A program made the position numbers and the translations under genes. The notes below the pieces were generated by a model. The model had not been told where the DNA came from. It did not search any database and worked only from the letters and a program-made list of their open reading frames with translations. 64,000 nt of DNA, from IMG/VR virus record IMGVR_UViG_3300035703_000009, positions 124,001 through 188,000 of that record. One strand, given 5' to 3'. Of this stretch, positions 8,901-49,342 are shown piece after piece (position 1 is the stretch's first letter; each line of letters begins with the position of its first letter).

Positions 8901-9647
8901 CTGGACCTTGACTCATCATCTGACCTAGAGATCAATACTGCATCGAATAAGCAAGTTAGAATCAAATCTGTTGGAAACTCAAATTTAATATTAGAGACTG
9001 GAGGTGGAACTACTAATAATAACATTAGAATCTATGATGGAAACTCTTCAGTTGCGACTAACGAAGCTCTTCGAATAGTGACTTTTCCAGCTTCTACTTA
9101 TGTTGAGATAGGTGCAAAAAACAATAGAACACTATACACGACGACTAGCGGAGCAGATAATATAATTCAGGCAACATCAGCAAATGTCAATATTAATGCA
9201 GATAAATTAGTCGTAAATACTAGTCAAAACTATTCGGTTCTTACTAGCCCATTAACTGTATCTGCGAACTCAGACATAATTATGAGTGGATTGTCCACGC
9301 TTAGCGTCTCTGGAGGAACTGCAACTATGCTTTGGAATAGAGTAGGTAACGTAGTTACAGTTAGCGGTGAATTAGATTCAAATATTTGGAGCGAATCGTC
9401 TGGCAATTGGGAGTATACGTTATCTGTTCCAGTAAGAACTACAAATCCAATTCTATATTGTTCTGGAACAGCTAGCATTCTGGGAAATTCACCGACTCTC
9501 GGTACTCCAATTTATTCTTCAGGAATAGCCACAGCTAATGGAGTAAGTGTCAATTCCATATTACTCAGAGTTAAATTAATTCAATTTTTATATCCTGTTA
9601 CTGGAATAGATCGAGCAACCTTTTCTTTTATGTATAGGCTCGCTTAA
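5976..9647 (+). CDS. Tail fibre/receptor-binding-like structural protein
   Basis: Short collagen-like G-X-Y run (GEPGPIGFSGTQGSAGPIGG), LVIVD-like propeller segments (FKIDVSNPAAP) and a C-terminal RVGNVVTVSG fibre-tip motif. Confidence 0.6.
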   Translation: MPIRINLKELFPADAQEITIDKINFNFNKLLALGVGEPGPIGFSGTQGSAGPIGGVGSQGTRGSTWIVDAGSPTITTGLLDGDLYLDSTALAVWQWDAATSTWNFLFDISAIVQNYLNSSPSPFVRGFGDGSPNDQRFILFGKRDGLYTDDIQQNPASLNDVLFLTNYDEKLITNPPVLIGSPDTDEFYNALLTVSVDQRNGDPLRRSHIELGSLYGTLSPVITPADENFKMRYDRVTGSIHPGLIYYNQQTLSLDINSLINPGSRTFSSVFAFQSPKYLPTSPPNPSINGFSNVYIGSRYGLDEVAPSATSTSTLADGIVIATGGSGANIGLATGYSITGVSGQSQYFNFASPQDHLMLDAIGTSSSIFLNDFTYQNGGNLVQLGTTPARLQGQAGIFVLSGAAVVPQTAAMAVSGNKVISVIGKKDVTNLQTIPQFYSTYGETVIENVNAPAFHLSRNYTTAINPFSVLDFAGISDIAVSGDYMYAVKCLSLNNTTSSIGLGRATFQTTQLNQELDQLPVATTKLIASSVTPPQYDCLHRIKLRGNLAVVTSNALPVTPSVANLGGSLVPGNTYDGRVLLLDITSPSTVIEVGSVVSTKQQAGSGASTRSAFMDMDVVDDLVFTLTWEQTPASPTTANVAIKVDAFSIKGDDVEPTSPPAVVYKASTFSVTNGTMINASALNVSQYTSLSKVGAIAANKKYVYAGYSIYSTGTGNYTPVIRLYEIRGGIGTTGLIPIPANLSFSYSGTITLDPGTPGAQITEVNKIHQVGGSLYVLTNSASNGSYLFKIDVSNPAAPFQVWSKNLGGAPQYYSNFVMVGKNIYAINTGIIDPANTISLSNITSIDIDGVYTGAAHIESLRSEELTVTQNFSVGNNATIHNELNVGGRAEIVGELGVGARLRLAGGAYFTGAPSTNQGGANLNLLQSIPTFYINGDQPIVNIKDTSGASPRLILSSTSTDFLSVGHSSLDNAVTLDLDSSSDLEINTASNKQVRIKSVGNSNLILETGGGTTNNNIRIYDGNSSVATNEALRIVTFPASTYVEIGAKNNRTLYTTTSGADNIIQATSANVNINADKLVVNTSQNYSVLTSPLTVSANSDIIMSGLSTLSVSGGTATMLWNRVGNVVTVSGELDSNIWSESSGNWEYTLSVPVRTTNPILYCSGTASILGNSPTLGTPIYSSGIATANGVSVNSILLRVKLIQFLYPVTGIDRATFSFMYRLA

Positions 9648-10609
9648 TTTATCTTCTTAACTAGCTTACGCCAAAGCACCTCGCCTTGAGCTCTAAGATA
9701 AGGTTCGAAAAACTGCAGCACTTCGAGCAAGCCAGCGCTCTTCTTAAGGTTTAGGATCTTTGGGTCCACTACAATGCTACGCTTGCGTGATACTTTCTTA
9801 TATAGATCGACGAAGAACTCGCCGAAGTTATTGGTGATGTATTCTGAGAATTTATGGTTTGCTAACTCAGCTGAAATAACGTCAAAGTACTCGTCAGCTG
9901 TAAACTCTCGACCCATAGTCGCGTTGCGATATGCGTCAGTTTGATATAGCTCTTCCTTACTATCGTAACTTGGTGCCTCGCCCAACTGTGCCATTATCTC
10001 AGAATCTGAAAGAGTATAGATGAGGCGTAAGAAGTTTTTCATTCCGCTTGAGTCTCTAAGAAAATCATACTTTTCTACCTCGCTGTGTAATAAGGCTCCT
10101 CGATAACCTTTCATGAAGTTTGGGTCCTTGTAATCATTGTATGCATGGGTCAACTCGTGATTCATCACCTCTCTGATGTTTGCGATCGCGAGATCTCGAT
10201 CAGCATTTAATCCCTCGTAAGGTAGAATGATTTTACACTGGATTATAATGTTTAGCTTACCTCGACCGGTCTTACGCAATCGATACTTATCATAGTTGCT
10301 AAGGTACCACCCGCTGCGATTCTGGTATGCCGAGGACTTAAGTGCAACGACTCTAAATTGAACAATTATCTCGGAGATCGGGAAGTCCCTAGCAGCCTCC
10401 TGTGATACCTGAGTGTGGGCATCGTCGATCACTATGTCTTCACTGTAATTGGTAAAACGTTTCTTAAACTTAAAGCTCAAATACTTGTCCAGGCTTTCAT
10501 GTATCTTGGCTTGGGCAAGTTGTGAGTACTCGCCAACGGTCTCAGAAAAACCTCGGGCTTCTGCCACAAACTGTGTAAATGTGCTCGCTCTGTTATTGGA
10601 CCCAATCAT
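9644..10609 (-). CDS. Putative zinc metallopeptidase (HExxH), candidate internal head protein
   Basis: VMNHELTHAY motif; N-terminal TFTQFVAEA resembles the T4 capsid-targeting sequence. Confidence 0.55.
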   Translation of the reverse strand: MIGSNNRASTFTQFVAEARGFSETVGEYSQLAQAKIHESLDKYLSFKFKKRFTNYSEDIVIDDAHTQVSQEAARDFPISEIIVQFRVVALKSSAYQNRSGWYLSNYDKYRLRKTGRGKLNIIIQCKIILPYEGLNADRDLAIANIREVMNHELTHAYNDYKDPNFMKGYRGALLHSEVEKYDFLRDSSGMKNFLRLIYTLSDSEIMAQLGEAPSYDSKEELYQTDAYRNATMGREFTADEYFDVISAELANHKFSEYITNNFGEFFVDLYKKVSRKRSIVVDPKILNLKKSAGLLEVLQFFEPYLRAQGEVLWRKLVKKIN

Positions 10610-11396
10610 TTAAGGTAAACGGCATTATTTTTTCAACGGCAAGCAGGTCATGCAGGTCTTGGGTGATGCTGAGCTCAAAGTCAACGTTCTTAGCGATGCC
10701 CCTATTTAATAAAACGGTGTCCTTTACTGCTTTCGCCACCTTACGTTCGTCTTGATTGTCTTCAATGATGGCAAAGATGACGTTGGTCTTGCCTATCATT
10801 GAATTGAGCTTAGGATCATTGAGTCGTTCAATTTCCTCCTTCATAACGTTCTCACGTAATTCTGGAACTTCCAAGGTCTTTATCTTGGAGAACGAATAAC
10901 CAAAGTCTCGACGAGAGTCGAAAGCCAGCTTCCATATCCTGTATGTGGTGCTACCTGAGTGATTTGTCACAACAAAGACCTCCTTCTCGGAATGAATCTT
11001 CTTGTTCATGTAGAAGACCCTCACTTTTTCGAGTATGTCGACATGCAGATCAGTGTACTCGATCAACAAGTTTAAGAAGAGAAAGTTCGCGTTCCTAAAG
11101 ATTTCGGCCACCTCGATGGGCTGTTGATAGATCTTTGCCAGCTCATCCCTAATAAGATTGAGTCGAGGCTCATTAAAAATTGACTTTAGCTTTGAGGTGA
11201 AGAGTTTACCGGTGCATGCTAAGTTATTGAGGTTTAAGCTATGGAACAGGACCTCATAAAAACGATCAATATTGCCTTCCTTGATCTCATTACGATATTT
11301 TATGCTTGCGCCTAACAGCACATAGGTAAAATACTCAGCGTCTAAGTAATTTCCTTTGGTGATCCAAAGCGGATCTAAAACGTATTGGGTCTTCAC
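10593..11396 (-). CDS. Hypothetical phage protein
   Basis: 267-aa ORF with an upstream promoter-like motif. Confidence 0.6.
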   Translation of the reverse strand: MKTQYVLDPLWITKGNYLDAEYFTYVLLGASIKYRNEIKEGNIDRFYEVLFHSLNLNNLACTGKLFTSKLKSIFNEPRLNLIRDELAKIYQQPIEVAEIFRNANFLFLNLLIEYTDLHVDILEKVRVFYMNKKIHSEKEVFVVTNHSGSTTYRIWKLAFDSRRDFGYSFSKIKTLEVPELRENVMKEEIERLNDPKLNSMIGKTNVIFAIIEDNQDERKVAKAVKDTVLLNRGIAKNVDFELSITQDLHDLLAVEKIMPFTLNDWVQ

Positions 11397-11495
11397 TGGG
11401 TAAGTCTCTCTTTCTTATTATTTATTTTACTATGGTGACAATCTCAGTTTAGGCTCAACTTTCAAATAAATAAAATAAACCGACAATACTGTCTA

Positions 11496-13646: not shown

Positions 13647-13651
13647 TCCTA

Positions 13652-14437
13652 ATGAAGAGCTCAAATCACGAGAACATACGTAACGAAAACGTTAATGACA
13701 TTTTCCTAAGAAACGCCACCATTTCGGTGCTCGACCTGCTCAATCGCAACATCATCATCGACTTAAAGAGAGACGATAAGGTGCAAAAGTTTGAGGTGCC
13801 AGTATTTTATAACTTTTCCTCAGACGAAGGCTTCATGAAGGACTTTTTCCTAGAGTTGCCGACTGACTGTAAGTACCCAAACAAAGCAGAGGGCAACTAC
13901 GAGATCATGCCACGTGGAGTGTTGACCTTGACAGGTTTCGCAGTTCGTCCAGGAGACGTGACCAATAAGTTTGTGCGAGGCACTTTTACTCAAGAGGTAA
14001 GAGACATCAACGAACAAAAACAGCTAAAGGCTTTCTCTTCAAGGTTGTTCACCATCCCAATGAGCCTAAAGTACTCGCTAAAGATAGAAAGCGATAACCT
14101 GAACAAGACCTTTAAGATCATCGAAAAGATCTTTGATTTCTACTATAAGTACCAAGTACAGTACTTCCAGTTTAGAGGCCTCCGGATTCCTGGGCAAGTC
14201 ACCTTCCCAGACACGGCCGAGTTCCAAAAGACCTATAACTTTGATTATACTACTGACCAGAAGGTGACGATCACCATGTCATTAGACTTTGAGACCTACT
14301 TTCCAAGTTTTGACGACCACTCGACCCTATTTAAGGGCAACACCATAAAACAATTCAACTTGCGTGAAAAAGCCAAGGATTCTGACGTAGTCTTCGATGA
14401 CTCATGGATAGACCAAGACTTCCCACAAAGCGAGTAA
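13652..14437 (+). CDS. Tail completion/sheath terminator (T4 gp15-like)
   Basis: VPVFY..., MPRGVLTLTG and P..L.Y.L.I patterns; follows the neck gene. Confidence 0.6.
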   Translation: MKSSNHENIRNENVNDIFLRNATISVLDLLNRNIIIDLKRDDKVQKFEVPVFYNFSSDEGFMKDFFLELPTDCKYPNKAEGNYEIMPRGVLTLTGFAVRPGDVTNKFVRGTFTQEVRDINEQKQLKAFSSRLFTIPMSLKYSLKIESDNLNKTFKIIEKIFDFYYKYQVQYFQFRGLRIPGQVTFPDTAEFQKTYNFDYTTDQKVTITMSLDFETYFPSFDDHSTLFKGNTIKQFNLREKAKDSDVVFDDSWIDQDFPQSE

Positions 14438-14451
14438 AAATAAATAACAGT

Positions 14452-15024
14452 ATGGAAACCAGACTAAAAGGCTTTACTCAATTCGTAAACGAATCTGCAC
14501 AAGTATCTGAGAACTTGCAGTATCACTTGGAGAACGGTCTCTCAATAACAGAGTCAGTCTTTCGTCCAGGCAGTGAGGCACACGTGCAGCTCTTGACTGA
14601 GGCTCGCGACTTGTTTTTTGCCAACTTGATCTACTTAAACGAGATGGATGCGGCACTCTTCGTCAACACTGACCTTGGAAAGACAAGCGAGTATGCAGGT
14701 CAGGTAGTACCTCTCGACCTAGTCTTAGAGGCCGAGTACAATGGAAAGAAGGTAGAGATCGGCAAGCCAATGCGAGGAGGAGACACTAAAAAGTACTATG
14801 TCTATGTGATGAATCCTAGCACCAAGCGAGTGAAGAAAATAGCATTCGGTGACGTCAAGGGAGGACTTACTGCCAAAGTAAGCAACCCAAAGGCTCGCAA
14901 GTCCTTTGCCGCTCGACATAACTGTAAAGAAAAGACCGATCGCATGTCTGCAGGTTACTGGGCATGTCGAATCAATCGATACGCTCACTTGTGGGGCGGA
15001 AAAACATATCCTGGATTCTGGTAA
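14452..15024 (+). CDS. Conserved hypothetical phage protein, candidate internal head protein
   Basis: Likely start at ATG 14452 (METRLKGFTQFVNES) after ATAAATA; basic C-terminal domain ARKSFAARHNC...AGYWAC. Confidence 0.65.
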   Translation: METRLKGFTQFVNESAQVSENLQYHLENGLSITESVFRPGSEAHVQLLTEARDLFFANLIYLNEMDAALFVNTDLGKTSEYAGQVVPLDLVLEAEYNGKKVEIGKPMRGGDTKKYYVYVMNPSTKRVKKIAFGDVKGGLTAKVSNPKARKSFAARHNCKEKTDRMSAGYWACRINRYAHLWGGKTYPGFW

Positions 15025-16082
15025 TGAAACCTTATTTTGACATAGAAAAAAATGGAGCAAAGGTTCGCACCTTTGTTGAGAGCGTGGATCCAATCGACCT
15101 AAAGTGGCACCGCGACGCAGAAGACCGCTGGGTGAGGGCCATTGGAGCAAGCGATTGGAAGCTTCAACTGGATAACCAGTTGCCAGTCAGCCTTACTGAG
15201 GAAGTCTTTATCCCAGCTGGCGAATGGCATAGACTAATCAAAGGCACAGATGAGTTGAAGGTCTCAATTAGAGCCGGCAAAAAGCTATTCGAATCACAAG
15301 GAGCTAGTTTAGGCTATCGTTCCGGAACATTTAATCCCAGTGAACCAGCTGAGCTGTTAAGCAGCAAAGGGATAGGAATAGTCAGCTCGAGAGTCGGACT
15401 CTTGGGTTCAGGTTATTATTTTGTCGGCAGTCCACAGACTGCTGAAGAGATAGGATCAGAGGTGGGACACGGAGGGCTTTCAGTAGTTGACTTAAAGAAC
15501 TATAACCTATATCGGCCTAGTGACCCAAAAGCCTTCTATGAAAACCTGAGAGACCTTACCAAGTATTTCAATGACGCAACTAAAGAAAGTCTAAGCGATC
15601 CTAGATTTAAAAGCAACTTTGATGACGCAGTTGAGGCATTTTCAGAATACTTAGAGCTAGACGAAGACTCAGTACGTAAGACTTTCGTTGATTACTTAAG
15701 GGACGTGTTATTACGTCATGACGGAGTATTACTCTCAAATCGACTGTTAGCACCGATGGGCTATGATGGAATTGACCTTACTCAAACACAATTAGATCAC
15801 TTTGGAGTAGGTTCGCTCATCTTTGCTGGAAAGCTAATAGACGGAACCTATCGTCAACTGCTAGAAGAAAAGAAAAAGATCAATCCAGCGTACTTAACCA
15901 GGGACGCAAAGGAGATGCGCAGTGAGATCAAAAAACACGCAAAAAAATCGGATGACGACGCTTCTGCTTACACTAGCCACGAAAAAGGAGGCTGGAAAGC
16001 AGACTACTCAAAGTCCGGTAAGAAATATAAGACTAAACCTAGCAAATACACCTTGGCGTACCAAAAAAAGTTTGGAAAATGA
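15024..16082 (+). CDS. Multidomain protein with N-terminal cupin-like domain
   Basis: TAATG-coupled start at 15024; LKWHRD...FIPAGEWHRLIKG cupin-like motifs. Confidence 0.55.
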   Translation: MKPYFDIEKNGAKVRTFVESVDPIDLKWHRDAEDRWVRAIGASDWKLQLDNQLPVSLTEEVFIPAGEWHRLIKGTDELKVSIRAGKKLFESQGASLGYRSGTFNPSEPAELLSSKGIGIVSSRVGLLGSGYYFVGSPQTAEEIGSEVGHGGLSVVDLKNYNLYRPSDPKAFYENLRDLTKYFNDATKESLSDPRFKSNFDDAVEAFSEYLELDEDSVRKTFVDYLRDVLLRHDGVLLSNRLLAPMGYDGIDLTQTQLDHFGVGSLIFAGKLIDGTYRQLLEEKKKINPAYLTRDAKEMRSEIKKHAKKSDDDASAYTSHEKGGWKADYSKSGKKYKTKPSKYTLAYQKKFGK

Positions 16083-16351
16083 CACAATATGTTTTACCGT
16101 TTGCCCTGTTTGAAAACGAACAGGCACTAAAGAATAAAGCAAAGAACAGCGGAATCCCGCTTGGAATCTTACGTACTGTGTACAGCAAGGGAATGGCTGC
16201 ATGGAAGACAGGACACCGACCTGGAGTCTCTCAACAACAATGGGCCATGGGCAGGGTAAACTCTTTCATCATGGGAGGCAAGACCACTAAAAAAGCCGAT
16301 AAAGCCCAATGGGAAGCAGCCAAACGTGCAAAAAAAGCCAAACGTAAATAA
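16079..16351 (+). CDS. Small basic protein (DUF5824-like)
   Basis: SGIPLGIL..VY.KG.AAW.TGHRPG....WAMGRVNSF pattern. Confidence 0.55.
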   Translation: MTQYVLPFALFENEQALKNKAKNSGIPLGILRTVYSKGMAAWKTGHRPGVSQQQWAMGRVNSFIMGGKTTKKADKAQWEAAKRAKKAKRK

Positions 16352-16899: not shown

Positions 16900-16903
16900 T
16901 CCT

Positions 16904-20731: not shown

Positions 20732-20741
20732 TTATTCGTGC

Positions 20742-24197: not shown

Positions 24198-24290
24198 AAT
24201 TAAATAGATCTTTTTTATCTATTTAGAGTATTTTACCTAAAAGTACTAAATTGGTTTTATGAGTATAAATAAACTAAAGACTAAAAGTTA

Positions 24291-31997: not shown

Positions 31998-32408
31998 ATG
32001 ACTCAAACTGGCTTTGAACTAATTGAACTGACTGCAGGAATAAACTATTCTCCTACTTTCGTTAGTACTGATAAAAGACTTCCTGCAAATGAAAAGACAA
32101 CTATTGGTTACTATCAGATCGGCGAGGTTGCACAATATGGATTTGCGCACGGTCCAGTTTTCAAGATAGAGTTCGTAAACCTATCAAGCATTGCTACTGC
32201 AACTCACGTGAAGATATGGGGACTCGGCAATCAAGATGATGCTGCTCCGCTCTATCCGATCACTTATTTTAACCCAAGTTACGGTAACACTAAGATCGCC
32301 ATATGGTTAAAGAAATTTGAGTTTTGTGATAACGCAGGAAATCCAATAGAGGAAACCAATTACACAGTAGTCGGTTATAAAAAGAAAGCGATGCCGCTAG
32401 CTTGGTAA
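31998..32408 (+). CDS. Hypothetical protein
   Basis: 136-aa ORF. Confidence 0.55.
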   Translation: MTQTGFELIELTAGINYSPTFVSTDKRLPANEKTTIGYYQIGEVAQYGFAHGPVFKIEFVNLSSIATATHVKIWGLGNQDDAAPLYPITYFNPSYGNTKIAIWLKKFEFCDNAGNPIEETNYTVVGYKKKAMPLAW

Positions 32409-32863
32409 TGAAAAAAGTCAACGAAAATTCTGGATATGCTACTCGTGGTGATTTTACCAGAGGACTTCCTTTTTATGGAACCCAGGGAGACTTCAACTTC
32501 ACGGTAGGTCGTAGCAAGTTTACTCCTGGTATATCAGTCAAACAGGTACCGCTATCTGACCTATCAGTTAAAGGCGATCCTGGCTTCTCTGACTTCGATA
32601 TGAGTGTTAATAAGCTTAAGACGTATTTTAGGCCTGGACATAGGGTGAGAGGCATCCTAGTTAACTCTCAACTAGAAAGTGAGAATGGCAAAATGGTGGT
32701 GGGTCGACTACATAAGATCCAACCCGACTACTCTAATCAAAACATTCGAGTCTGGATCACAGACCCAAAGACTCTTGAGGTAAAGGAAATCTATCCTGAG
32801 ACCGTCGAGAGAATCTACGAATCTCACCGAGCGCTAAGCTTTGACCAGTTCATCAATTCTTAA
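32408..32863 (+). CDS. Hypothetical protein with SH3-like C-terminal part
   Basis: TAATG-coupled start; FRPGHRVRG...; ends ALSFDQFINS. Confidence 0.55.
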   Translation: MKKVNENSGYATRGDFTRGLPFYGTQGDFNFTVGRSKFTPGISVKQVPLSDLSVKGDPGFSDFDMSVNKLKTYFRPGHRVRGILVNSQLESENGKMVVGRLHKIQPDYSNQNIRVWITDPKTLEVKEIYPETVERIYESHRALSFDQFINS

Positions 32864-34138: not shown

Positions 34139-35821
34139 GTGGGAGAAAAACTCAGTAAATTCATTGAGCTATTTAATACAAATGCAGCAGCTTCTGTAGA
34201 AAGATCTAAGGTCACGCTCGATAAATTCACAGCAGTTAGAGAAATTGCACTAAAGCTTACTGCTCCAGTAAACGAAGAGTATAAAACGCTAGGCTCTCTT
34301 ATTGAAAAAATGATACCTGAGTCTGGTATACTAGACGACTCTCTTTTTCGCGAAGTCTACGCGAAAACTGAGCTTGAAAAGGAAGACAAAGCTGTCGTCT
34401 CTGACTTATTTAAGTTAAAATCTGCTCCTAATTCATATAATAAAGCAGTAAATATCAAGGAAAAAGGAGGCGAGTCATATTTTAACAGCCTCATGCAAGA
34501 AATAGGAAATGCCATGTCTTCCTCAAGCCTCTCATTTGATGATGTAGTAGGCAAAGACATAAAGGGGTTCGTCGATTTTTTATATGAAGGAATTAACAGC
34601 TTACCTGAAGGGCCAGTCGATCTAAGTAGTCCTGAACTCTATGCCGCAGTGGTGGAAAACGGCACACCGATCGGTAAAAAAGAAGAGGCAAAGTCTTCTC
34701 CAGGAGCAATAAATGAGGCCTTACCGAAAAAGGGAGAGGAAGTAGCTCCCAAGTTACCTTCAACATCTGCAGTCAATCCTGAAAAAGCTGCAGAGACTTT
34801 AAAGACCGAAGTCGAATCGACTAGCAGTCAAGTCACATCGGTCTCACCTGAAGTTCCAGCTGAACTTGAGAAAAAGGAAAAGCAGGCAATCAATATTAAC
34901 ATCGAGAAGCCTGAAGTTCCAAGCGAAATTACGACTACTCCAACCCAAGTCGTAAACCAAGGAAATCAATCTACGACAAGTGTCCAAAACACTACAGTAA
35001 ATAGCGAAGTAACCACTCAGAATCAGACTAACTTAACGAGTGCACCAGCGTCTACTCAAATCAATGACATGTCTTCTAAAAAGACAGAGAACTCTAATCA
35101 AACGACTCTTGGCGGCTCAAAGAGCATTACACAACAGGCTCTTGAATTAGGCAAACAATATGGTTTCTCTGAAAAAGAATTAAAGGAACTTGCGTTAGGC
35201 TCAACCATAAACTCGTCGACCTTAACTAATAAGATTGAAAGTTTAACCAAGAACCAGAGCAAGACTGCAACCTCTTCGACCGCTAACCAATTAAGTAGTT
35301 CGACTTCATCAATAAATGAGGGAGAAGAAGAGTCTGAAACTGCGACTAGTACCGACCAATCTATCATAAATGATGCTAAACCCAGCACAATGGCTAGTGG
35401 TGAAAAATTTGATGCTTTAGTCGCGACTGCAAAGAAGTATGGCATAAACACCGAGTCCTTTGAAAAATCCAAAGCCTCTTCGCAAGTAGAAGAACCAGAG
35501 GGCAATGAGGAAGTCAGTGCACAAAAGTCTGCTTTACCGCAGACTATGGAAGTAAGCAAGACTCAACAGACTCTACCGAGAGAGACTACCGTTGAACCAG
35601 TAGCACAAAAGCAGGCGACTGCTCTCGAGTCTCAAGCACAAGCACCAATCGAAGCTGTAGAAAAACCAGCCGATAGAATGAACGCTGCTCAGGCTAGCGA
35701 ATCTAAACCTGCAGAGCAGGCAAAGCCTGCTCAAATGATAGACCTTTCTGGCTTAGAAAACAGAATGATGAGAATTGAGCACCTCTTGGCAAACACGCTA
35801 GAAGTTAAAATAGTTGAATAA
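34139..35821 (+). CDS. Low-complexity S/T/E/Q-rich protein (hub/tape-measure-like)
   Basis: Position after the hub genes; disordered composition. Confidence 0.4.
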   Translation: MGEKLSKFIELFNTNAAASVERSKVTLDKFTAVREIALKLTAPVNEEYKTLGSLIEKMIPESGILDDSLFREVYAKTELEKEDKAVVSDLFKLKSAPNSYNKAVNIKEKGGESYFNSLMQEIGNAMSSSSLSFDDVVGKDIKGFVDFLYEGINSLPEGPVDLSSPELYAAVVENGTPIGKKEEAKSSPGAINEALPKKGEEVAPKLPSTSAVNPEKAAETLKTEVESTSSQVTSVSPEVPAELEKKEKQAININIEKPEVPSEITTTPTQVVNQGNQSTTSVQNTTVNSEVTTQNQTNLTSAPASTQINDMSSKKTENSNQTTLGGSKSITQQALELGKQYGFSEKELKELALGSTINSSTLTNKIESLTKNQSKTATSSTANQLSSSTSSINEGEEESETATSTDQSIINDAKPSTMASGEKFDALVATAKKYGINTESFEKSKASSQVEEPEGNEEVSAQKSALPQTMEVSKTQQTLPRETTVEPVAQKQATALESQAQAPIEAVEKPADRMNAAQASESKPAEQAKPAQMIDLSGLENRMMRIEHLLANTLEVKIVE

Positions 35822-40769: not shown

Positions 40770-40798
40770 ATTTTAGCCAGTTTTTAGTATTGTAATCA

Positions 40799-40826
40799 AA
40801 ACTGACCACCCAGAATACAGTATAAT
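40799..40826 (+). promoter_or_regulatory. Bipartite promoter motif AAACY-N15/16-GTAWAA (representative copy)
   Basis: Also at 47822, 51088, 60392 (+) and 11450, 24257, 60446 (-). Confidence 0.55.
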
Positions 40827-40842
40827 AACTAAACACCATTTG

Positions 40843-42070: not shown

Positions 42071-42076
42071 GATAGC

Positions 42077-43159: not shown

Positions 43160-43183
43160 ATAAATAATAAGAAAGGCTAATTA

Positions 43184-45031
43184 ATGCATAGTTTTTCTGA
43201 ATATTTACATCACACTTCTCCTGAACCTCAAATCACTAAGCTATTTGAAACAGCAGGTCCAGTCTTTTCATCTCGCTTGACTCTAGAAAACTTTGACTTT
43301 GAGGTCAATGCAATCAACGAGTTCGAGAATCTACTTCCCAATTCATTTGACTTGCACTTAGACATGATCCTTACTGGAGGGTCTACTCTAGTCTCTCAAT
43401 ACTACCATGATCTCGCTAGTGGCAAAGAAAAAATGTTTGAAAAGATTAGAGAATCGGTTAATTCTTCTGACTTTGAAAAGATTAACGAGTCTCTTAAAAG
43501 CCTACACACCGTGCTTAAGGAAAAATACTCTCATCTCATTGAGCAGGCAGCGATTGACTTTGACAGTAAGTTTGGAGACATAACCAATGATGCAGTAATC
43601 GATGCTGCACTAAAGGGAGCCCCAGAAACCACTGCAGATAAGAGCAAAGTCATATCAATGCTTAAGGACCTATGGAATGGTCTAACTGATGATGGCGATT
43701 GGTTATCAGTCTCTCAACTTTTGCTGGACATAGTTGGAATCTTTGATCCATTTGGGGTCGCAGATGGTATCAACGCGATGATTTACTTTAAGAGAGGAAG
43801 GTGGTTGCTTGGAGCAATATCAGTAGTCTCTGCTCTTATTCCATACGGCGGTGATGCTCTTAAATTACTAAAGCTTGGCAAGACTGGCAAGTATGCCGAA
43901 GAAGTCGTGATGTACACAATCAAAGGCGGTCGTGGAGCTGCTCAAAAGGCACTACAAAGAATTCCAGTAAAAGACCGAGGAGCAGTGATGAAAGCGTTAT
44001 CATATATCGCTCGCGTCCTTCCATCGGCTATGTCAAAAGCCAGTGCAGCAATCTCTTCGTTTTTTGGCAAGTACTTAGCAAGGTATACTAAATGGATTCC
44101 AGGAATGGAAAACTTTTTTAATGGAATCGCAAAAAGATTTTCTGGCTATGCTAAGAAAATGGACGATCTCGTAAAAGACCTCAAGTACGCTCAAGGAACC
44201 CTAATTAAAGCGGCTGATGCTACTGCTGACCTTGCCAAGGCAGCTAAACGTGGTGCTAAGATGGAAATAGACTCAGCTAGCGGGCTAATTCGTCTCTATA
44301 ACGCTGAAGGCAAAGTGATCAGAGAATTTTCAGAAGAATTCCTAAAGAAGTCTAAGTTTTGGAGCACACTCGGCAAAAATCCTATTGTGAGAAACGTGTC
44401 TACTGCTGAGGACCTAGTTAAGTATTATAATGGAATCGCAAAGGTTACTCCATCCCTGTTTTCGTCAGTTGCCAAGATATTTTCAGTTATTCATAAAGGA
44501 GCAGTTGGCAGTTCTAAATTTACGATATTTGTCGGAAAACAGATAATTAAGATGGCAACTGGTCAAACTGCTGAAGAACTTGGAATCCCAGACGAACAGT
44601 CAGAGTTTTACGGTGCTGACTTTTTAAACAATGCAGTACAAAAAAAGATAGATGAAGAAAGAAAAAAAGGCGTAAACTATCCAGCAGTAGTGACCTTTGA
44701 CTCAGCAAACGACGAAGACTATCAAACTATCACTAAGTATCAAAACGATTGGGCGAAAATAGTAGGCGGACCTGAAGTCATCCCAGTCATGTATGATAAA
44801 TTTGGAGACGCTGAGTTAAAACAAGAATTCAATGACTTTTGGAGCAAAGTAGGAAAAGGTGAGATAAAAAGAGATGCCTCAGGCAACTTAATCAAAGGTG
44901 AGCCAGCTCCAGTAAATAAAGTCGTAAAAGAGGTTCCTAATCTACGCTCGACTGACTGGTATCGGGAAGCTTTTCCTCAGGTACCCAATGAATCACGCAT
45001 ACTATCATTCAGTAAATTTATCAACGACTAA
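43184..45031 (+). CDS. Protein with pre-toxin (PT-TG-like) motif, candidate ejected head protein
   Basis: LLDIVGIFDPFGVADGINAMIY...GAISVVSALIPYGGD.LK. Confidence 0.55.
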   Translation: MHSFSEYLHHTSPEPQITKLFETAGPVFSSRLTLENFDFEVNAINEFENLLPNSFDLHLDMILTGGSTLVSQYYHDLASGKEKMFEKIRESVNSSDFEKINESLKSLHTVLKEKYSHLIEQAAIDFDSKFGDITNDAVIDAALKGAPETTADKSKVISMLKDLWNGLTDDGDWLSVSQLLLDIVGIFDPFGVADGINAMIYFKRGRWLLGAISVVSALIPYGGDALKLLKLGKTGKYAEEVVMYTIKGGRGAAQKALQRIPVKDRGAVMKALSYIARVLPSAMSKASAAISSFFGKYLARYTKWIPGMENFFNGIAKRFSGYAKKMDDLVKDLKYAQGTLIKAADATADLAKAAKRGAKMEIDSASGLIRLYNAEGKVIREFSEEFLKKSKFWSTLGKNPIVRNVSTAEDLVKYYNGIAKVTPSLFSSVAKIFSVIHKGAVGSSKFTIFVGKQIIKMATGQTAEELGIPDEQSEFYGADFLNNAVQKKIDEERKKGVNYPAVVTFDSANDEDYQTITKYQNDWAKIVGGPEVIPVMYDKFGDAELKQEFNDFWSKVGKGEIKRDASGNLIKGEPAPVNKVVKEVPNLRSTDWYREAFPQVPNESRILSFSKFIND

Positions 45032-45879
45032 TGAGGCTTAAGAAATTCCTAGAATATACTGACCTGCACTCAAAGGATCCAAAGACCTTTGAGAAAAGAG
45101 TAATATTTGCCTCGCCTGACAAGTATGCTGTCACCATGTTTGAAGAGGTAGACTCAGCTGAAAGCCTTGTCAACTATCCAGATAGACCGATCGTCCTATG
45201 GGGAGGCATGCACCTCAAACCTACCCTAATCAACGAGAATAAAAATCATGTCTTCAATCAAAGGCCGCTACCGACTAGCAAACAGATAGTGCTTGATCTA
45301 GAAGGCTCAGAGTTTTTACCAAAGAGCACCAAGGAAAGAGCAAACGTCCACTCGCTAAAGTTCCCAATAGTTGGCTGGCAAGGAGACGAGCCCATCGACT
45401 TTAGAACATATGGCAAATACAAGAAGTCAGAACAACAGTTCGATCGGTTTAGCGAGAAGGTCACTCCAGTGACCCGATTTGACGTCATAATCTTTAGAGA
45501 AGAACCAATACACTTACAAGAAAGGGTTAACCAGATGGGCTTCGATGTTGACGAGAAGAGGTTCTATCGAATGGATCAAGTAAAGAAGATCGCAAAGTCA
45601 ATCCATGAAAAGTACTCACCGGACTTTTACCAAGCAACACTAATCGATGACAGTCAGAAGTTGTACCTAGAGTCAGTCTCGACATCAGCTAAACTGTCGC
45701 CTTCTCAGCTAACAAAGATGTATGAAAAGGCATATGAAAGTCACTACGAGACTAGACTACCACACTGGTTCAAACAACAACTTTTTGAAAAACACATAAA
45801 ACCATATTACGTTTCTAGGTACTTAGATGCAGCTCTGCTTAAACCTAAGAGCGCGATCGACTTTAAAAAATACACATAA
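45031..45879 (+). CDS. Hypothetical protein (possibly a degenerate ATP-grasp fold)
   Basis: FLPKST...LKFPIVG...FSEK pattern. Confidence 0.4.
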   Translation: MRLKKFLEYTDLHSKDPKTFEKRVIFASPDKYAVTMFEEVDSAESLVNYPDRPIVLWGGMHLKPTLINENKNHVFNQRPLPTSKQIVLDLEGSEFLPKSTKERANVHSLKFPIVGWQGDEPIDFRTYGKYKKSEQQFDRFSEKVTPVTRFDVIIFREEPIHLQERVNQMGFDVDEKRFYRMDQVKKIAKSIHEKYSPDFYQATLIDDSQKLYLESVSTSAKLSPSQLTKMYEKAYESHYETRLPHWFKQQLFEKHIKPYYVSRYLDAALLKPKSAIDFKKYT

Positions 45880-45881
45880 TT

Positions 45882-46073
45882 GTGTTAACAATCAACTGCG
45901 AAAACAAGAAAATAGAAATGGTCCTAAAGGAGTATCGCAAGCGCATGGAAGCAAGCGGCACACACAAAGAGATGATAAAACGTAAGACCTTTACTAAACC
46001 TTCTGAAAAGAGGAGAGCGCAAATATTATCCGCAAAATATAGAGCAAAGCATGTTAATCAAGAAGTTCAGTGA
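45882..46073 (+). CDS. rpsU: Phage-encoded 30S ribosomal protein bS21
   Basis: IE..LKEYRKR......KE...RKTFTKPSEKRR motif; 63 aa, basic. Confidence 0.85.
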   Translation: MLTINCENKKIEMVLKEYRKRMEASGTHKEMIKRKTFTKPSEKRRAQILSAKYRAKHVNQEVQ

Positions 46074-46542
46074 TTTCGTTAACGAATCCGAAGACCTTAG
46101 TAACCTTGCTGCAGGAGTAGCGATCGTTTGGAACAACAAGATCTTACTTGTGCACCCGACTGGTGCCTCCTGGAAAAGAGGCACATGTGGAATCCCAAAG
46201 GGTAGCATGAAAGAGGATGAGGATCCAGTAGAGAGCGCCATTCGTGAGCTTGCTGAGGAGACCGGAATCTCCCTGACCCCAGATCAACTCGAAAAGTCTC
46301 CATATATCGTCGAGATCTACAGCAAACGCCGACACACCACTCGACTGCTCACCTACTTTTTATGCAAGATCGAAGACCTTTCGCAGATAGGCCTCGCTTC
46401 AGAGAAGATACCTAAAGATCAATTACAATTGGAAGAGGTGGACTGGGCAAAATTCGTCTCTGCCGAGGAAGCATATCCACTAGTCACTCAAGCCCAACTA
46501 ATCATCTTGGACAGACATCTTACCCTTAGCTCAAATAAATAA
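46051..46542 (+). CDS. Nudix hydrolase
   Basis: PKGSMKEDEDPVESAIRELAEETG Nudix box. Confidence 0.9.
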   Translation: MLIKKFSDFVNESEDLSNLAAGVAIVWNNKILLVHPTGASWKRGTCGIPKGSMKEDEDPVESAIRELAEETGISLTPDQLEKSPYIVEIYSKRRHTTRLLTYFLCKIEDLSQIGLASEKIPKDQLQLEEVDWAKFVSAEEAYPLVTQAQLIILDRHLTLSSNK

Positions 46543-46557
46543 CTAAAAGAAGCTAGG

Positions 46558-47823
46558 ATGAGCTATTTACTATCATATCAAAATTGGGCAAAATTAAACG
46601 AACAGAAGGATATTTCGCAGCTTTCCAATCATGAACAACGGTTAGTAAACAGGTTCATTAGAAAAATAGAAAACGACGACTCAATCTCGGATCTAATCGA
46701 TAGAAAGGACGAGCTGCCTACCGTCGATCCTACTGAGCTTGAAAAACTAGCTCAAAATCTTAGCATCGATGCTAACACCCTAAACGACTGGATAGCCGGT
46801 CGACGTGATGACTCAGAGTTTATCAGATCGATCGCTCAAAACCTACTCCAACAAGGATCTTCTAGGCAAGGTCTCAAACAAGCACTAAAATCAGCTGATC
46901 CAGTCACACAGCTTGCCGACATTGCTGCTGGCCAGAAAATGCTTAAGCTCGGCTCTACTGGAGAAGACGTAAGGACGATACAGCAAAAGCTATATGATCT
47001 AGGTTTCATGGACTCTGAGCCTACTGGTTCGTTTGACAACGAGACCGATGCTGCCGTTCGTGAATTTCAAAAATCCAAAGACATTGGAGTCGACGGAATA
47101 GTCGGACCCATCACCTACTCTCAGCTCTATGGCATCAAATTAAAGCCAATAGTCGACCTTAGCGGTTCAGACTATGAGTCAATCGTCAAGTCGGTGATCG
47201 ATAACTTAGAGGGAGGGTATTATCACCCTAACATGAGGCAAAAAGATCCAGGTAAGTTCTCAGCATATGGACGATCTGGCGAGACCTTGTTCGGCCTCGA
47301 TCGCTTTGCTGGACATGGTCTTTTTTATTCCACTCCAAGGATAGGTAAGGATCCAGTAAGTGACCTTGAGAACATTGAAAGCGATAAGTACCAATATAAG
47401 TCTAATGACGCAAAGGAGTTTTGGGAAACCATTGATTCAGCTAACGCAAAAGATAGCTGGCCTTGGAACTATCGCGGAGGTCAATATGAAAACAAGTTAG
47501 AAGAGTTGGCAGGTAAGATCATGCGTCCTGAGTTTGAGTCATTATTCGGTCAATACCTTTCTCGTCCAGCACAAGAGATCGTGAAACACGACCCTCGGCT
47601 AATGTATCACTTCGTGTATGCTGCATGGAACGGCTCAGGTTGGTTTAAAAAATTCGCTCGGGACGTCAGCACAGCCGTGTCAAATGGAACAACTGATCCT
47701 GCGATATTAGCGAAGATTGCAATAGACTCTAGAACAAAGGAGGGGCTATCTGACGGATCTGCTCCAAACCAGTTAATCGCTCAAGGCGGTAAAAAGATTG
47801 AAAAAATGTTTGGCATGGCGTAA
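46558..47823 (+). CDS. Peptidoglycan-binding domain plus GH108-like muramidase
   Basis: LKLGSTGEDVRTIQQKL...AVREFQ...VDGIVGPIT; LEGGY...GETLFG. Confidence 0.7.
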   Translation: MSYLLSYQNWAKLNEQKDISQLSNHEQRLVNRFIRKIENDDSISDLIDRKDELPTVDPTELEKLAQNLSIDANTLNDWIAGRRDDSEFIRSIAQNLLQQGSSRQGLKQALKSADPVTQLADIAAGQKMLKLGSTGEDVRTIQQKLYDLGFMDSEPTGSFDNETDAAVREFQKSKDIGVDGIVGPITYSQLYGIKLKPIVDLSGSDYESIVKSVIDNLEGGYYHPNMRQKDPGKFSAYGRSGETLFGLDRFAGHGLFYSTPRIGKDPVSDLENIESDKYQYKSNDAKEFWETIDSANAKDSWPWNYRGGQYENKLEELAGKIMRPEFESLFGQYLSRPAQEIVKHDPRLMYHFVYAAWNGSGWFKKFARDVSTAVSNGTTDPAILAKIAIDSRTKEGLSDGSAPNQLIAQGGKKIEKMFGMA

Positions 47824-47865
47824 ACCTTGACCTTCTTCCTAGTAAAAAAGCATAAACATTTACAA

Positions 47866-48360
47866 ATGGAAGAAATTACTATCGTAGAAGAAACTACCCC
47901 GCAAACTGAACCTCTAGAGCCTCAGGCTGAAACTCAATCACCAGAACAACCCAAGACCAAAAAAGAGATTCTTAGCGATCTTTTGACCAGTCGCACTGGA
48001 ACATTTGACTTAAAGATCACCCATGCTGACCTAAAGTATCTCAAGAACACGATGCAGTCAAAAGTTGAATGGAAGGGCCCAAACGAGGCATATCTCACAA
48101 TAATGACCATTCTAACCCTGTCGAATGCGTTAGATGAAATGAATCCAAAGGCGACAGAAGCAGTCACTGTCAAGTTACCTTCGTCCACGTTTGAGTCGTT
48201 AAACTACTTCCTAAATAAGATAAGCGGCACTGGTCTCGACTCTGCGCAACGTCTTTTTTCTGCCACCATGATCCTGCGTCCTACTATCGAAGCAATCAAA
48301 AAGCTTGATGCCGAGATTGACACACTTAAAGAGGAGCTAAAAACTGAGGAAAAATCTTAA
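47866..48360 (+). CDS. Hypothetical protein
   Basis: Likely ATG at 47866 downstream of an AAACC-N15-GTAAAAA motif. Confidence 0.6.
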   Translation: MEEITIVEETTPQTEPLEPQAETQSPEQPKTKKEILSDLLTSRTGTFDLKITHADLKYLKNTMQSKVEWKGPNEAYLTIMTILTLSNALDEMNPKATEAVTVKLPSSTFESLNYFLNKISGTGLDSAQRLFSATMILRPTIEAIKKLDAEIDTLKEELKTEEKS

Positions 48361-48393
48361 GAGTTTAGATAAATAATAAAAAATTAAACGAAA

Positions 48394-48831
48394 ATGAAAG
48401 TTCAAAATTTTGCAGGCTTCATGAAAACTCGTGCAACCGGAAAAGTTAACGAAGAGGATAACTTTCCAGCATTCGATAATATGACTAGCGAAACAATGTA
48501 TGGTGGAACACCTAACGGTTTTGCAAACGAATATGATGCCGACCGAAACGCAGTAGACTTTGGAGCTAATCCAGAGGAAGAAGAAACACCGGAACTTGAT
48601 GAGACTCCAGAAGGAGAGGAAGGAGCTGAAGGTGAAGATGAGCAAGAGGAAGTGACTCTTGAAGACCTAAAAGCCATGATCGATGAGCTAACCGAAAGAG
48701 TTGAAAAACTTGAAGGAGGTGGTGAAGAGGAAGAAGGCGAAGAGGGAGCTGAAGGAGAAGGCGAAGAGGGAGCTGAAGGAGAAGCTGCAGAGGGAGAAGA
48801 AGGAGCCGAAGGCGAAGAAGCTGCAAAGTAA
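48394..48831 (+). CDS. Highly acidic protein with EGEEGA repeats
   Basis: Glu/Gly-rich tandem repeats; flanked by a late motif and a terminator. Confidence 0.7.
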   Translation: MKVQNFAGFMKTRATGKVNEEDNFPAFDNMTSETMYGGTPNGFANEYDADRNAVDFGANPEEEETPELDETPEGEEGAEGEDEQEEVTLEDLKAMIDELTERVEKLEGGGEEEEGEEGAEGEGEEGAEGEAAEGEEGAEGEEAAK

Positions 48832-48850
48832 TAAGATCCTATAGAAAATT

Positions 48851-48890
48851 TAAAATGGGCGGACGTTAATCGACTGCCCATTTTTATTTT
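48851..48890 (+). terminator. Intrinsic terminator
   Basis: AAAATGGGCGG...CTGCCCATTTT followed by a T-rich tail. Confidence 0.7.
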
Positions 48891-48904
48891 AATAAATAAT
48901 CAAT

Positions 48905-49342
48905 ATGAGTCACACACAATCTCCCAAACACCTGCCCTTATTTGAGGCATTCTGTAAAAAGGTGCAAATGGACGAGCTGCCAGTCGAAGCCAAGATCGGT
49001 GGAGTCCCGCTCAATCTAAAGGCTCTGACTACTCCTGCTAGCCAAGCAAAAGGTTACATGGGAGCAGAGAATGAACCTACTGAAAGTGAGGGTCTGCTTT
49101 TCGTTTACGACAAACCCATGCCTCTCAACTTTTGGATGAAGAACGTCAAGTTTCCGCTCGACATCATTTTTTTTGACTCAGATCGTAAGTACACCGGCCA
49201 CCAGACGATGGCTCCACACGCAGGAGAAGCCGATCATGTGCTGCCTAGATACTCCAGTAAAAAGCCAGCTCAATTCGCAGTTGAAGTATGCAAAGGGTGG
49301 TGTGATAAACACCTCAAAGATGGAGCTACACTAAACTTTTAA
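48905..49342 (+). CDS. DUF192-family protein
   Basis: GLLFVY...FWMKNVKFPLDIIFFD. Confidence 0.8.
   Translation: MSHTQSPKHLPLFEAFCKKVQMDELPVEAKIGGVPLNLKALTTPASQAKGYMGAENEPTESEGLLFVYDKPMPLNFWMKNVKFPLDIIFFDSDRKYTGHQTMAPHAGEADHVLPRYSSKKPAQFAVEVCKGWCDKHLKDGATLNF

What the first reader, a model, noticed from the sequence alone, without database searches (positions are those of the whole stretch)
9644..49342. T4-like capsid-targeting motif on about 10 accessory proteins suggests an injected payload
A shared F/Y-x-x-F/Y/W(-x-x-E) motif lies at the N-terminus of: the metallopeptidase (TFTQFVAEA), 14452 (KGFTQFVNES), 16079 (LPFALFENE), 43184 (HSFSEY), 45031 (KKFLEY), Nudix (KKFSDFVNES), the muramidase (LSYQNWAKLNE), the acidic protein (QNFAGF) and DUF192 (LPLFEAF). 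It also appears at the C-termini of 32408 (LSFDQFINS) and 43184 (LSFSKFIND). Known: T4 internal proteins use an MKTYQEFIAE-type sequence removed by the prohead protease after Glu. Inference: these enzymes are packaged and ejected with the DNA, and C-terminal copies would be unusual.
Basis: partly seen in the sequence, partly recalled or inferred. Interest (0 to 1): 0.6.

Follow-up and report, generated by a model that had tools for sequence, protein, structure and literature searches.

The report
T4-type capsid-targeting tags, expanded set
An uncultivated 207-kb T4-like phage puts the same short peptide tag that phage T4 uses to load proteins into its head on at least 10, probably about 25, otherwise unrelated proteins; the tag also occurs at C-termini and 11 times in the scaffold, so it could be used to predict virion-carried proteins from sequence alone.

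Summary
The quoted peptides are all present. In strict form ([FY]-x-x-[FYW]-[VIL]-x-E starting at residues 5-17) the motif is far above chance: 10 proteins genome-wide against 0.56 in shuffles. Three are in the window (9644, 14452, Nudix 46051). It matches the mapped functional residues of the T4 capsid targeting sequence MKTYQEFIAE: Tyr4 and Phe7 target, Ile8 and Glu10 are needed for processing. The genome encodes a gp21-family prohead protease. It is fused to a scaffold holding 11 tandem 14-residue repeats of the same motif. Orthologues in related contigs keep the tag while neighbouring residues change. Tagged genes share a late-type promoter motif with structural genes. A cultured relative, Chryseobacterium phage MA9V-2, has MKTFTYFINEA-type N-termini. 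Both C-terminal copies are real and conserved: all 120 listed homologues of 32402 end in F-x-x-F-[IVL]-x-S. The muramidase carries a variant tag shared with two other proteins. The 43184 and 45031 N-terminal pairs are kept in orthologues. 16079 is marginal. The acidic protein and DUF192 cannot be told from chance. Packaging is well supported by inference, but ejection is untested. Overall this is a new variant of a known kind.

The parts
9644..10609 (-). 321-aa protein with HELTH (HExxH) at about residues 151-155 and a strict N-terminal tag: residues 11-17 FTQFVAE|A (nt 10559-10579).
   Evidence: No Pfam or PHROG hit. Atlas shows a virus-only family whose fold alignment starts at residue 13, just inside the tag. 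'Metallopeptidase' is a lead only.
14452..15024 (+). 190-aa protein (phrog_7595) with a strict tag: residues 8-14 FTQFVNE|S (nt 14473-14493) and a second V-S-E site at residues 18-20.
   Evidence: Of 99 same-length homologues, 89 keep aromatic-xx-aromatic-aliphatic at the N-terminus. Versions of about 320 aa with an inserted domain still begin with the tag.
16079..16351 (+). 90-aa DUF5824 protein with a marginal tag, FALFENE at residues 8-14 (nt 16100-16120).
   Evidence: Pfam. 9.5 bits in the position matrix. The G001 orthologue begins MILNFKEFCLLEA.
32402..32863 (+). 153-aa protein with a C-terminal tag ...RALSFDQFINS* (nt 32840-32860) that has no Glu.
   Evidence: All 120 listed homologues (56-99% identity) end in F-x-x-F-[IVL]-x-S, mostly N before the final Ser, and 116 end exactly there. 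The model shows a disordered N-terminal 60 aa, a small beta-barrel, and a terminal helix at 147-151.
34139..35821 (+). 560-aa protein of unknown function with an internal copy, KGFVDFLYE|G at residue 144 (nt 34568-34588). A candidate internal processing site.
   Evidence: 15.9 bits. A late-type promoter motif lies upstream.
43184..45031 (+). 615-aa protein tagged at both ends. N-terminus: MHSFSEYLHHTSPE (nt 43193-43213). C-terminus: ...VPNE|SRILSFSKFIND* (nt 45008-45028), with an N-E-S cleavage-type site 5 residues before the motif.
   Evidence: Four homologues at 43-94% identity keep both ends and the PNES site.
45031..45879 (+). 282-aa protein with only an aromatic pair, MRLKKFLEY (nt 45046-45057). 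This resembles T4 IPI, which also has no nearby Glu.
   Evidence: A 46%-identical orthologue begins MSLKNFEDY, so the pair is kept while the residues between it change.
46051..46542 (+). 163-aa Nudix hydrolase with a strict tag: residues 6-12 FSDFVNE|S (nt 46066-46086). The tag lies outside the Nudix domain (residues 19-141).
   Evidence: Pfam. Seven orthologues at 58-61% identity keep FN[DQE][YF][IL]xE, with linkers of variable length.
46558..47823 (+). 421-aa protein with a peptidoglycan-binding domain and PHROG endolysin hits. It carries the variant tag YQNWAKLNE|Q at residues 7-15 (nt 46576-46602).
   Evidence: The same variant begins two other proteins, MSIILDYKSWGSVNE and MILDFSKWKKLNE. 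Three of the genome's four matches lie at residues 5-7.
48394..48831 (+). 145-aa protein with a very acidic C-terminal half and an N-terminus MKVQNFAGFMK...KVNE|ED. The tag is unresolved.
   Evidence: A late-type promoter motif lies 25 nt upstream. No family hits. It scores below the background cut-off.
48905..49342 (+). 145-aa DUF192 protein with a 38-residue N-terminal extension holding LPLFEAF. The tag is unresolved.
   Evidence: Only an identical copy was found elsewhere.
51288..51488 (+). 66-aa ORF with KTYEQYLVE|A at residues 21-30 (nt 51354-51374).
43160..43166 (+). One of five late-type promoter-like ATAAATA(AT) motifs upstream of tagged genes in the window. The others are at 14440-14446, 46535-46541, 48369-48375 and 48892-48898.
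   Evidence: 44 of the 61 ATAAATAA copies in the genome lie within 45 nt upstream of a start codon. They include the protease-scaffold gene and the baseplate wedge gene.

Best explanation
The motif is this lineage's version of the phage T4 capsid targeting sequence.

How it works (inferred by analogy with T4). A short amphipathic peptide, basic-x-[FY]-x-x-[FYW]-[VIL]-x-E, sits 5-17 residues from the start of otherwise unrelated late-expressed proteins. It docks them into the scaffolding core while the prohead assembles. The gp21-family serine protease then cuts after the Glu, releasing the mature protein inside the head. The two aromatic residues do the targeting. The aliphatic residue and the Glu form the cleavage site.

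The scaffold. In this phage the protease is fused to its scaffold, and the scaffold carries 11 tandem copies of the same unit. The tags therefore look like single scaffold repeats.

C-terminal copies. These use the same aromatic pair. They either lack the Glu, so the tag is predicted to stay on (32402), or they are preceded by an N-E-S site that would remove the tag (43184).

The cargo includes a Nudix hydrolase, an HExxH protein, a peptidoglycan hydrolase and many proteins without known relatives.

Shown: the sequence pattern, its position, its enrichment, its conservation, the presence of the protease, and shared promoters. Inferred: docking, cleavage, presence in the virion. More weakly inferred: ejection into the host.
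For: 1. Enrichment and position. Ten proteins carry the strict motif at residues 3-17, against 0.56 in shuffles and 1.4 expected from interior rates. Only the i,i+3 aromatic spacing is enriched.

2. Match to T4. Real T4 sequences are IPII/IPIII MKTYQEFIAE|A and IPI MKTFKEF.... In T4, targeting maps to residues 4 and 7 and processing to 8 and 10. Asp at 10 blocks cleavage but not targeting, and gp21 cuts after L/I-x-E (PMC9026906). The stretch before T4 gp23's known cleavage site reads FGSFLTE|A (the site itself is from my own knowledge).

3. Protease. Peptidase_S77 hit at 43.6 bits. 30% identity to T4 gp21 over 110 residues, including the HPP and SSR motifs.

4. Scaffold. Eleven repeats of S-I-x-Y-x-x-Y-[ILV]-A-E-x-L-N-x, conserved in 7 related contigs. 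A matrix built only from N-terminal tags ranks five of these repeats among the top 50 of about 63,000 windows.

5. Orthologues keep the tag while other residues change.

6. Codons at motif positions vary synonymously, so selection acts on the peptide.

7. Fifteen of 31 tagged genes have the ATAAATA promoter-like motif that also precedes the protease-scaffold and baseplate genes. Only 31 of 226 other genes have it (p=2.6e-5).

8. Cultured Chryseobacterium phage MA9V-2 has a 1207-aa protease-scaffold fusion full of aliphatic-N-E-S sites. Its N-termini include MKTFTYFINEA, MKNFFSFINEA and MKTFFTFVNES, and its capsid protein reads ...RWSEFINE|AAPK.

9. Most tagged proteins have no known family, as with T4 internal proteins.
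Against: - No virion proteome, cleavage data or packaging test exists for this phage or any close relative. The MA9V-2 paper has none.
- The complex prediction of scaffold with a tagged protein gave no answer.
- This phage's own capsid protein N-terminus has no full copy of the motif, only W-L-A-E and L-F-E.
- Some orthologues have lost the first Glu. G001 has FNQFVGNS, although a second aliphatic-S-E site follows.
- One orthologue lacks the tag altogether (G001 25510).
- Gene starts come from my own ORF caller.
- The set of 'loose' tagged genes used in the promoter test was picked by eye.
Confidence: 0.72

Rival explanations
1. The tags are real prohead-core propeptides, but the bearers are assembly parts rather than an injected payload. 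They would be core or scaffold accessory proteins that are degraded and expelled, or that stay in the head, like T4 gp67, gp68 and gp22.
For: - T4 uses the same protease and similar sites on core proteins that are degraded.
- Many bearers are small proteins of 66-190 aa without known relatives. One is very acidic, like T4 gp67.
- In MA9V-2 an 82-aa tagged protein sits between the portal-region gene and the protease gene, where T4 has genes 67 and 68.
Against: - Enzymes with complete catalytic domains carry the tag, with the tag outside the domain: the Nudix hydrolase, the HExxH protein and the peptidoglycan hydrolase. That is hard to explain for disposable scaffold parts.
- The bearers evolve fast and are spread over clusters of variable genes, like T4 internal proteins.
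Confidence: 0.2
2. The C-terminal copies are unrelated to head targeting. They bind another shared partner, for example a sliding clamp, as the C-terminal tails of T4 gp43 and gp55 do.
For: - T4 clamp-binding tails are also short, C-terminal and aromatic...SLDFLFG and ...SLDFLYEAND.
- The C-terminal class as a whole is not enriched with a loose pattern (8 against 5.5).
- The 32402 family is very conserved, unlike typical internal proteins.
Against: - The aromatic spacing differs: F-x-x-F here, F-L-F in T4.
- The sequence K/R-A-L-S-F-S-Q-F-I-N-S is nearly identical to the N-terminal tags K-S-F-S-Q-F-I-N-E-S of the 14452 family.
- This phage's polymerase fragment and its sigma-like protein do not end in the motif.
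- No gp45 relative was found.
- 43184 and the 564-aa protein at genome 28159 carry aromatic pairs at both ends, kept in orthologues.
Confidence: 0.2
3. It is chance, or a generic property of N-terminal amphipathic helices, or a nucleotide-level signal near start codons.
For: The loose motif is common (40 expected at N-termini).
Against: - The strict motif is about 18-fold over shuffles.
- Control spacings are flat.
- Synonymous codons vary.
- The same peptide occurs at C-termini and inside the scaffold, far from any start codon.
- It is conserved across hundreds of metagenomic homologues.
Confidence: 0.03

Closest known systems
Capsid targeting sequence (CTS) of T4 internal proteins IPI, IPII and IPIII (Mullaney and Black 1996, as reviewed in PMC9026906)
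   Same: - About 10 residues at the N-terminus.
- A basic residue, then an aromatic pair three apart, then aliphatic-x-Glu.
- Attached to unrelated, fast-evolving proteins.
- The phage encodes a gp21-family protease.
- Direct comparison: T4 MKTYQEFIAE|A, this phage ..STFTQFVAE|A and ..KKFSDFVNE|S, MA9V-2 MKTFTYFINE|A.
   Different: - 10 strict and probably about 25 bearers, against a handful in T4.
- Asn is the commonest residue before the Glu.
- The distance from the Met varies from 5 to 17.
- A second variant has two extra residues.
- C-terminal copies exist.
- Enzyme cargo includes a Nudix hydrolase and a peptidoglycan hydrolase.
- Nothing has been tested experimentally.
gp21 processing of T4 head proteins (gp22, gp23, gp24, gp67, gp68, Alt) at L/I-x-E
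   Same: Cleavage-type sites of aliphatic-x-Glu followed by a small residue. The scaffold is rich in such sites. T4 Alt and gp21 are also processed at the C-terminus.
   Different: T4 gp22 has A-E sites but no aromatic repeats. In T4 the protease and scaffold are separate genes. Here one 659-aa protein holds both, with 11 regular 14-residue units.
Propeptides of giant phages phiKZ, 201phi2-1 and SPN3US, cut by gp21-like proteases at S/A-x-E, with many head-internal ejection proteins
   Same: Many head proteins are processed after Glu. There is a large internal protein load. Propeptides carry redundant cleavage sites.
   Different: Those phages have no reported short aromatic targeting tag, and their propeptides are long. 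The motif here is the T4 type.
Encapsulin cargo-loading peptides
   Same: A short terminal peptide, often C-terminal, is enough to load unrelated enzymes into an HK97-fold shell.
   Different: No protease step, no scaffold, different sequence. This is an analogy only and was not tested.
Protease-scaffold fusions (herpesvirus UL26, phage P2 gpO)
   Same: The prohead protease and the scaffold are made as one polypeptide.
   Different: Those are different protease families (P2) or have no tag-like repeats. This comparison rests on my own knowledge.

Membership tests
T4-type capsid targeting sequence | Lies within the first 10-20 residues of the precursor. | tested here: met
   The first aromatic residue is at positions 5-17 in all 10 strict cases. 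In-frame stops lie close upstream, which fixes the starts.
T4-type capsid targeting sequence | Aromatic residues at the positions of T4 IPIII Tyr4 and Phe7, the targeting determinants. | tested here: met
   [FY]-x-x-[FYW] is present in every strict tag. The T4 mapping is and the T4 sequence.
T4-type capsid targeting sequence | Aliphatic residue two before a Glu, the processing determinants (T4 residues 8 and 10, gp21 site L/I-x-E). | tested here: met
   [VIL]-x-E, followed by S, A, G, Q or V in the 10 strict tags. Not met in 43184 N-terminus, 45031, 48394 and 48905, which resemble T4 IPI at best.
T4-type capsid targeting sequence | The phage encodes a gp21-family prohead protease with catalytic His and Ser. 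| tested here: met
   PF03420 above its cut-off. The BLASTP alignment to T4 gp21 covers DHPP/NHPP and SSR.
T4-type capsid targeting sequence | A portable tag on unrelated proteins. | tested here: met
   Bearers share no similarity beyond the tag (last block). In the 14452 family the tag stays at the N-terminus even when a domain of about 130 aa is inserted behind it.
T4-type capsid targeting sequence | The tag is sufficient for packaging into proheads, is removed by the protease, and the cargo is ejected. | not testable with these tools
   No proteome or genetics exist. The complex prediction gave no answer.
Sliding-clamp-binding C-terminal tail (T4 gp43, gp55 and gp33 type) | An S-L-D-F-L-[FY]-like tail on the polymerase and late transcription factors, with a gp45 clamp encoded. 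| tested here: not met
   This phage's polymerase fragment ends ...ENGEDDTDDE and its sigma-like protein ends ...EEKIEFI. No gp45 hit by Pfam or tblastn. A diverged clamp is not excluded.
Giant-phage (phiKZ-type) propeptides | Long propeptides cut at S/A-x-E with no short targeting tag. | tested here: not met
   The residue two before Glu is V, I or L, not S or A. The tags are about 10 residues long.

The most novel reading that the evidence does not exclude
The tag works by mimicking one scaffold repeat.

The scaffold half of the protease polyprotein is an array of 11 targeting units on one long helix. Any protein carrying a single unit at either end co-assembles with it. The protease then cuts scaffold repeats and N-terminal tags alike after the Glu.

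The invariant C-terminal ...F-S-Q-F-I-N-S-COOH of the conserved 153-aa protein would be an uncleavable mimic of the cleaved product. It could anchor that protein to the core, or perhaps regulate the protease.

If true, the tag gives a sequence-only way to list virion-delivered proteins across a large, mostly uncultivated group of phages with 100-460-kb contigs. Those proteins are candidate counter-defence enzymes, such as the Nudix hydrolase.
Probability: 0.3. Interest if true: 0.75.

Novelty: new variant of a known kind. Interest (0 to 1): 0.6.

Why it matters
Proteins injected by phages are the first viral factors to meet host defences, and they are almost impossible to recognise from sequence. 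A short, statistically clean tag shared with T4 would mark them directly in uncultivated genomes.

In this genome it points to a Nudix hydrolase, an HExxH protein, a peptidoglycan hydrolase and about 20 proteins of unknown function as candidate head cargo.

The tag-like repeats in the scaffold suggest a testable answer to an open T4 question, namely what the targeting sequence binds. The tag could also serve as a packaging handle for engineering phages of this group. The nearest cultured relatives by capsid protein infect Bacteroidota.

Tried and rejected
- **Complex prediction.** Protease-scaffold plus the 14452 protein scored 0.07. The verdict was no answer, so it is evidence neither way.
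- **My own EM motif finder.** On N-termini it converged on F-x-x-F-L-x-E but overfitted, assigning sites to 40% of proteins. I did not use it as evidence.
- **AlphaFold model of the protease-scaffold.** Confidence is poor (pLDDT 42). It places one helix at 288-442 over the repeats, which is only a hint.
- **Fold search of the 32402 model.** Only generic Tudor/SH3-like barrels.
- **Searches for relatives.** None found in the viral contig collection for 43184, 46558 or 9644. DUF192 had only an identical copy.
- **DNA-level tandem repeat in the scaffold.** None, so the repeats are old and kept at protein level.
- **Clamp-binding reading of the C-terminal copies.** Considered and not supported.
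- **Proteomics in cultured relatives.** None in the MA9V-2 paper. A search around Tenacibaculum phage PTm1 found nothing usable.
- **Literature.** The search found no paper linking the targeting sequence to phages of Bacteroidota or to jumbo phages. This covers only the held library.
- **Prevotella Lak phage locus.** Read under table 11, no protease-scaffold ORF stood out beside the capsid gene and nothing could be concluded. I named no other genetic code and did not pursue it.

Full report
**Setting.** The window is bases 124001-188000 of a single 207,110-bp viral contig from IMG/VR, estimated 81% complete. It is a distant T4-like phage.
- It has a Gp23-family major capsid protein, a large terminase, a baseplate wedge protein and a sigma factor.
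- Its capsid protein is closest to an uncultured 462-kb phage (38% identity), the Prevotella Lak phages (32%), and Chryseobacterium and Tenacibaculum phages (about 28%).
- A host in Bacteroidota is therefore likely, but not shown.

- The loose form, two aromatic residues three apart, occurs 63 times at residues 3-17 against 40.5 expected (p=6e-4). Spacings of one, three or four intervening residues show no excess. There is a real surplus of about 20 sites, but no single loose match is informative.
- The strict form [FY]-x-x-[FYW]-[VIL]-x-E occurs 10 times at residues 3-17 against 1.4 expected (p=2.6e-6).
- In 2000 shuffles of each N-terminal 25 residues the mean was 0.56 proteins and the maximum 5.
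- The ten strict tags start 5-17 residues from the Met and are followed by S, A, G, Q or V.
- Three lie in the window: 9644, 14452 and Nudix 46051. Seven lie elsewhere in the genome.
- Codons at the conserved positions vary synonymously (TTC/TTT, GTC/GTT/GTG/GTA, TTA/CTT), so selection acts on the peptide.

**What it matches.** I read the T4 genes directly.
- IPII and IPIII begin MKTYQEFIAE|A, and IPI begins MKTFKEF....
- A review of the T4 work states that the first 10 residues of IPIII suffice for packaging. Targeting depends mainly on residues 4 and 7 and processing on residues 8 and 10. Asp at position 10 blocks processing but not targeting. gp21 cuts after L/I-x-E (PMC9026906).
- Those four positions are Tyr, Phe, Ile and Glu. 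They are exactly the four conserved positions here.
- The stretch ahead of T4 gp23's cleavage point reads FGSFLTE|A. That cleavage follows Glu65 is my own knowledge.

**The protease and the scaffold.**
- A 659-aa ORF at genome 52877-54856, just upstream of the capsid gene, matches Peptidase_S77.
- It aligns with T4 gp21 at 30% identity across the HPP and SSR motifs.
- Residues 293-446 are eleven tandem 14-residue units with consensus S-I-x-Y-x-x-Y-[ILV]-A-E-x-L-N-x. These units repeat the motif itself.
- A position matrix built only from N-terminal tags ranks five of these units among the best 50 of about 63,000 windows.
- The aromatic residues and the Glu are invariant in seven related contigs at 66-80% identity.
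- There is no repeat at DNA level.
- T4 gp22 has A-E sites but no such aromatic repeats.
- The uncultured 462-kb relative has a 632-aa ORF in the same place with YVKYVAE, YTQYVKE and YSTYVKD. Its capsid protein begins MIKLINE|A.

**Conservation of the tags.**
- In five related contigs the orthologues of genome gene 23813 begin ..YSQFVNE..FSRYLVE and ..FSQFVNE, against FDQYLVE here.
- Seven Nudix orthologues at 58-61% identity keep FN[DQE][YF][IL]xE, with linkers of different length before the Nudix domain.
- The 14452 family has 2154 database relatives. Of 99 same-length ones listed, 89 keep the aromatic pair plus an aliphatic residue and 54 keep the strict form. Versions of about 320 aa with an extra domain still start with the tag. 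Many have a second aliphatic-S-E site a few residues on.
- The cultured Chryseobacterium phage MA9V-2 has a 1207-aa protease-scaffold fusion crowded with aliphatic-N-E-S sites. Its N-termini include MKTFTYFINEA, MKNFFSFINEA, MKTFFTFVNES and MKNFFINES, and its capsid protein reads ..RWSEFINE|AAPK.

**Variant and C-terminal copies.**
- The muramidase N-terminus YQNWAKLNE|Q belongs to a variant, [FY]xxWxx[LV]NE. It also begins a 595-aa and a 190-aa protein. Three of the four matches in the genome lie at residues 5-7.
- All 120 listed homologues of 32402 end in [RK]-A-[LM]-[ST]-F-x-x-F-[IVL]-[NG]-S, and 116 stop exactly there.
- Homologues of 43184 at 43-94% identity keep MHSFSEY at the start. At the end they keep ..P-N-E-S, 2-4 further residues, then L-S-F-x-K-F-[IV]... 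A cleavage-type site therefore precedes that tag.
- A 564-aa protein at genome 28159 and its orthologues at 34-39% identity keep aromatic pairs at both ends.
- In T4, Alt and gp21 are also processed at the C-terminus.

**Expression.**
- ATAAATAA occurs 61 times in the genome, 44 of them within 45 nt upstream of a start codon.
- It precedes the protease-scaffold gene, the baseplate wedge gene and many large structural ORFs. It resembles the T4 late promoter TATAAATA (my own knowledge).
- Fifteen of 31 tagged genes have it, against 31 of 226 others (p=2.6e-5).
- Tagged genes also cluster: genome 7.8-11 kb, 22-24 kb, 67-70 kb and 94-95 kb, window 43-49 kb, and genome 193-201 kb.

**Mechanism and limits.** The best reading is prohead targeting followed by cleavage, as in T4. 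I rate this at about 0.72. Docking to the scaffold repeats is an inference, and the one complex prediction gave no answer. Whether the cargo is ejected is unknown, because T4 tags both injected proteins and disposable core proteins. The tags on the acidic protein and on DUF192 remain unresolved, and 16079 is marginal. 'Metallopeptidase' for 9644 rests on an HExxH string and weak Atlas leads.

**Novelty.** The tag itself has been known since 1996. What is new:
- its presence in this distant, largely uncultivated lineage;
- the size of the tagged set;
- the enzyme cargo;
- the conserved C-terminal form;
- a protease-fused scaffold built from tag-like repeats.

I found no paper in the held library describing this.

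None of the operators' special restrictions came into play.

Noticed in passing
window 61864-63597 (+), with tRNAs at 60945-61202 and 63779-63853: A 577-aa Ro60/TROVE plus vWA homologue sits among tRNA-Asp, two tRNA-Met and tRNA-Cys genes. A partner Y-RNA-like gene might lie nearby.
   Followed up: no
window 57602-60384 (-): A sulfation-type cassette: sulfotransferase, a 294-aa protein of unknown function, a cytidylyltransferase-like protein and an APS kinase.
   Followed up: no
genome 16537-17973 (-) and 84916-86343 (-), outside the window: The family B DNA polymerase is split into two genes about 67 kb apart.
   Followed up: partly
window 52221-53345 (+): A thymidylate synthase family protein of 374 aa against a 266-position profile, so it has a large insertion. 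It could equally be a dCMP hydroxymethylase-type enzyme.
   Followed up: no
whole genome, e.g. window 24265-24271, 43160-43166, 48369-48375: A promoter-like motif, [GAT]ATAAATAAT(A)AAAA, lies about 25 nt upstream of 46 of 257 starts, mostly structural genes. It resembles the T4 late promoter.
   Followed up: partly
window 53401-53724 / 57288-57605 and 53937-55853 / 55860-57251: Two pairs of paralogues lie side by side: 107- and 105-aa proteins starting M..FNTIHVFGFG, and 638- and 463-aa proteins starting ..SG[IV]EIPKV. A third copy of the larger type lies near the capsid gene at genome 57746.
   Followed up: no
T4 genome NC_000866, 19107-19130 (-), locus L038: T4 has a further 54-aa ORF beginning MKTFKEFIKE, the same tag form as its internal proteins. 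I did not identify the gene.
   Followed up: no
genome 69216-69869 (+), 194558-195109 (-), 7798-8448 (+), outside the window: Perfect copies of the motif lie deep inside three proteins: FRKFVNE at residue 114, FNDFVNE at 61 after a DUF3008 domain, and FANFINE at 146. The first is conserved in three orthologues. These may be internal processing sites that separate two domains.
   Followed up: partly
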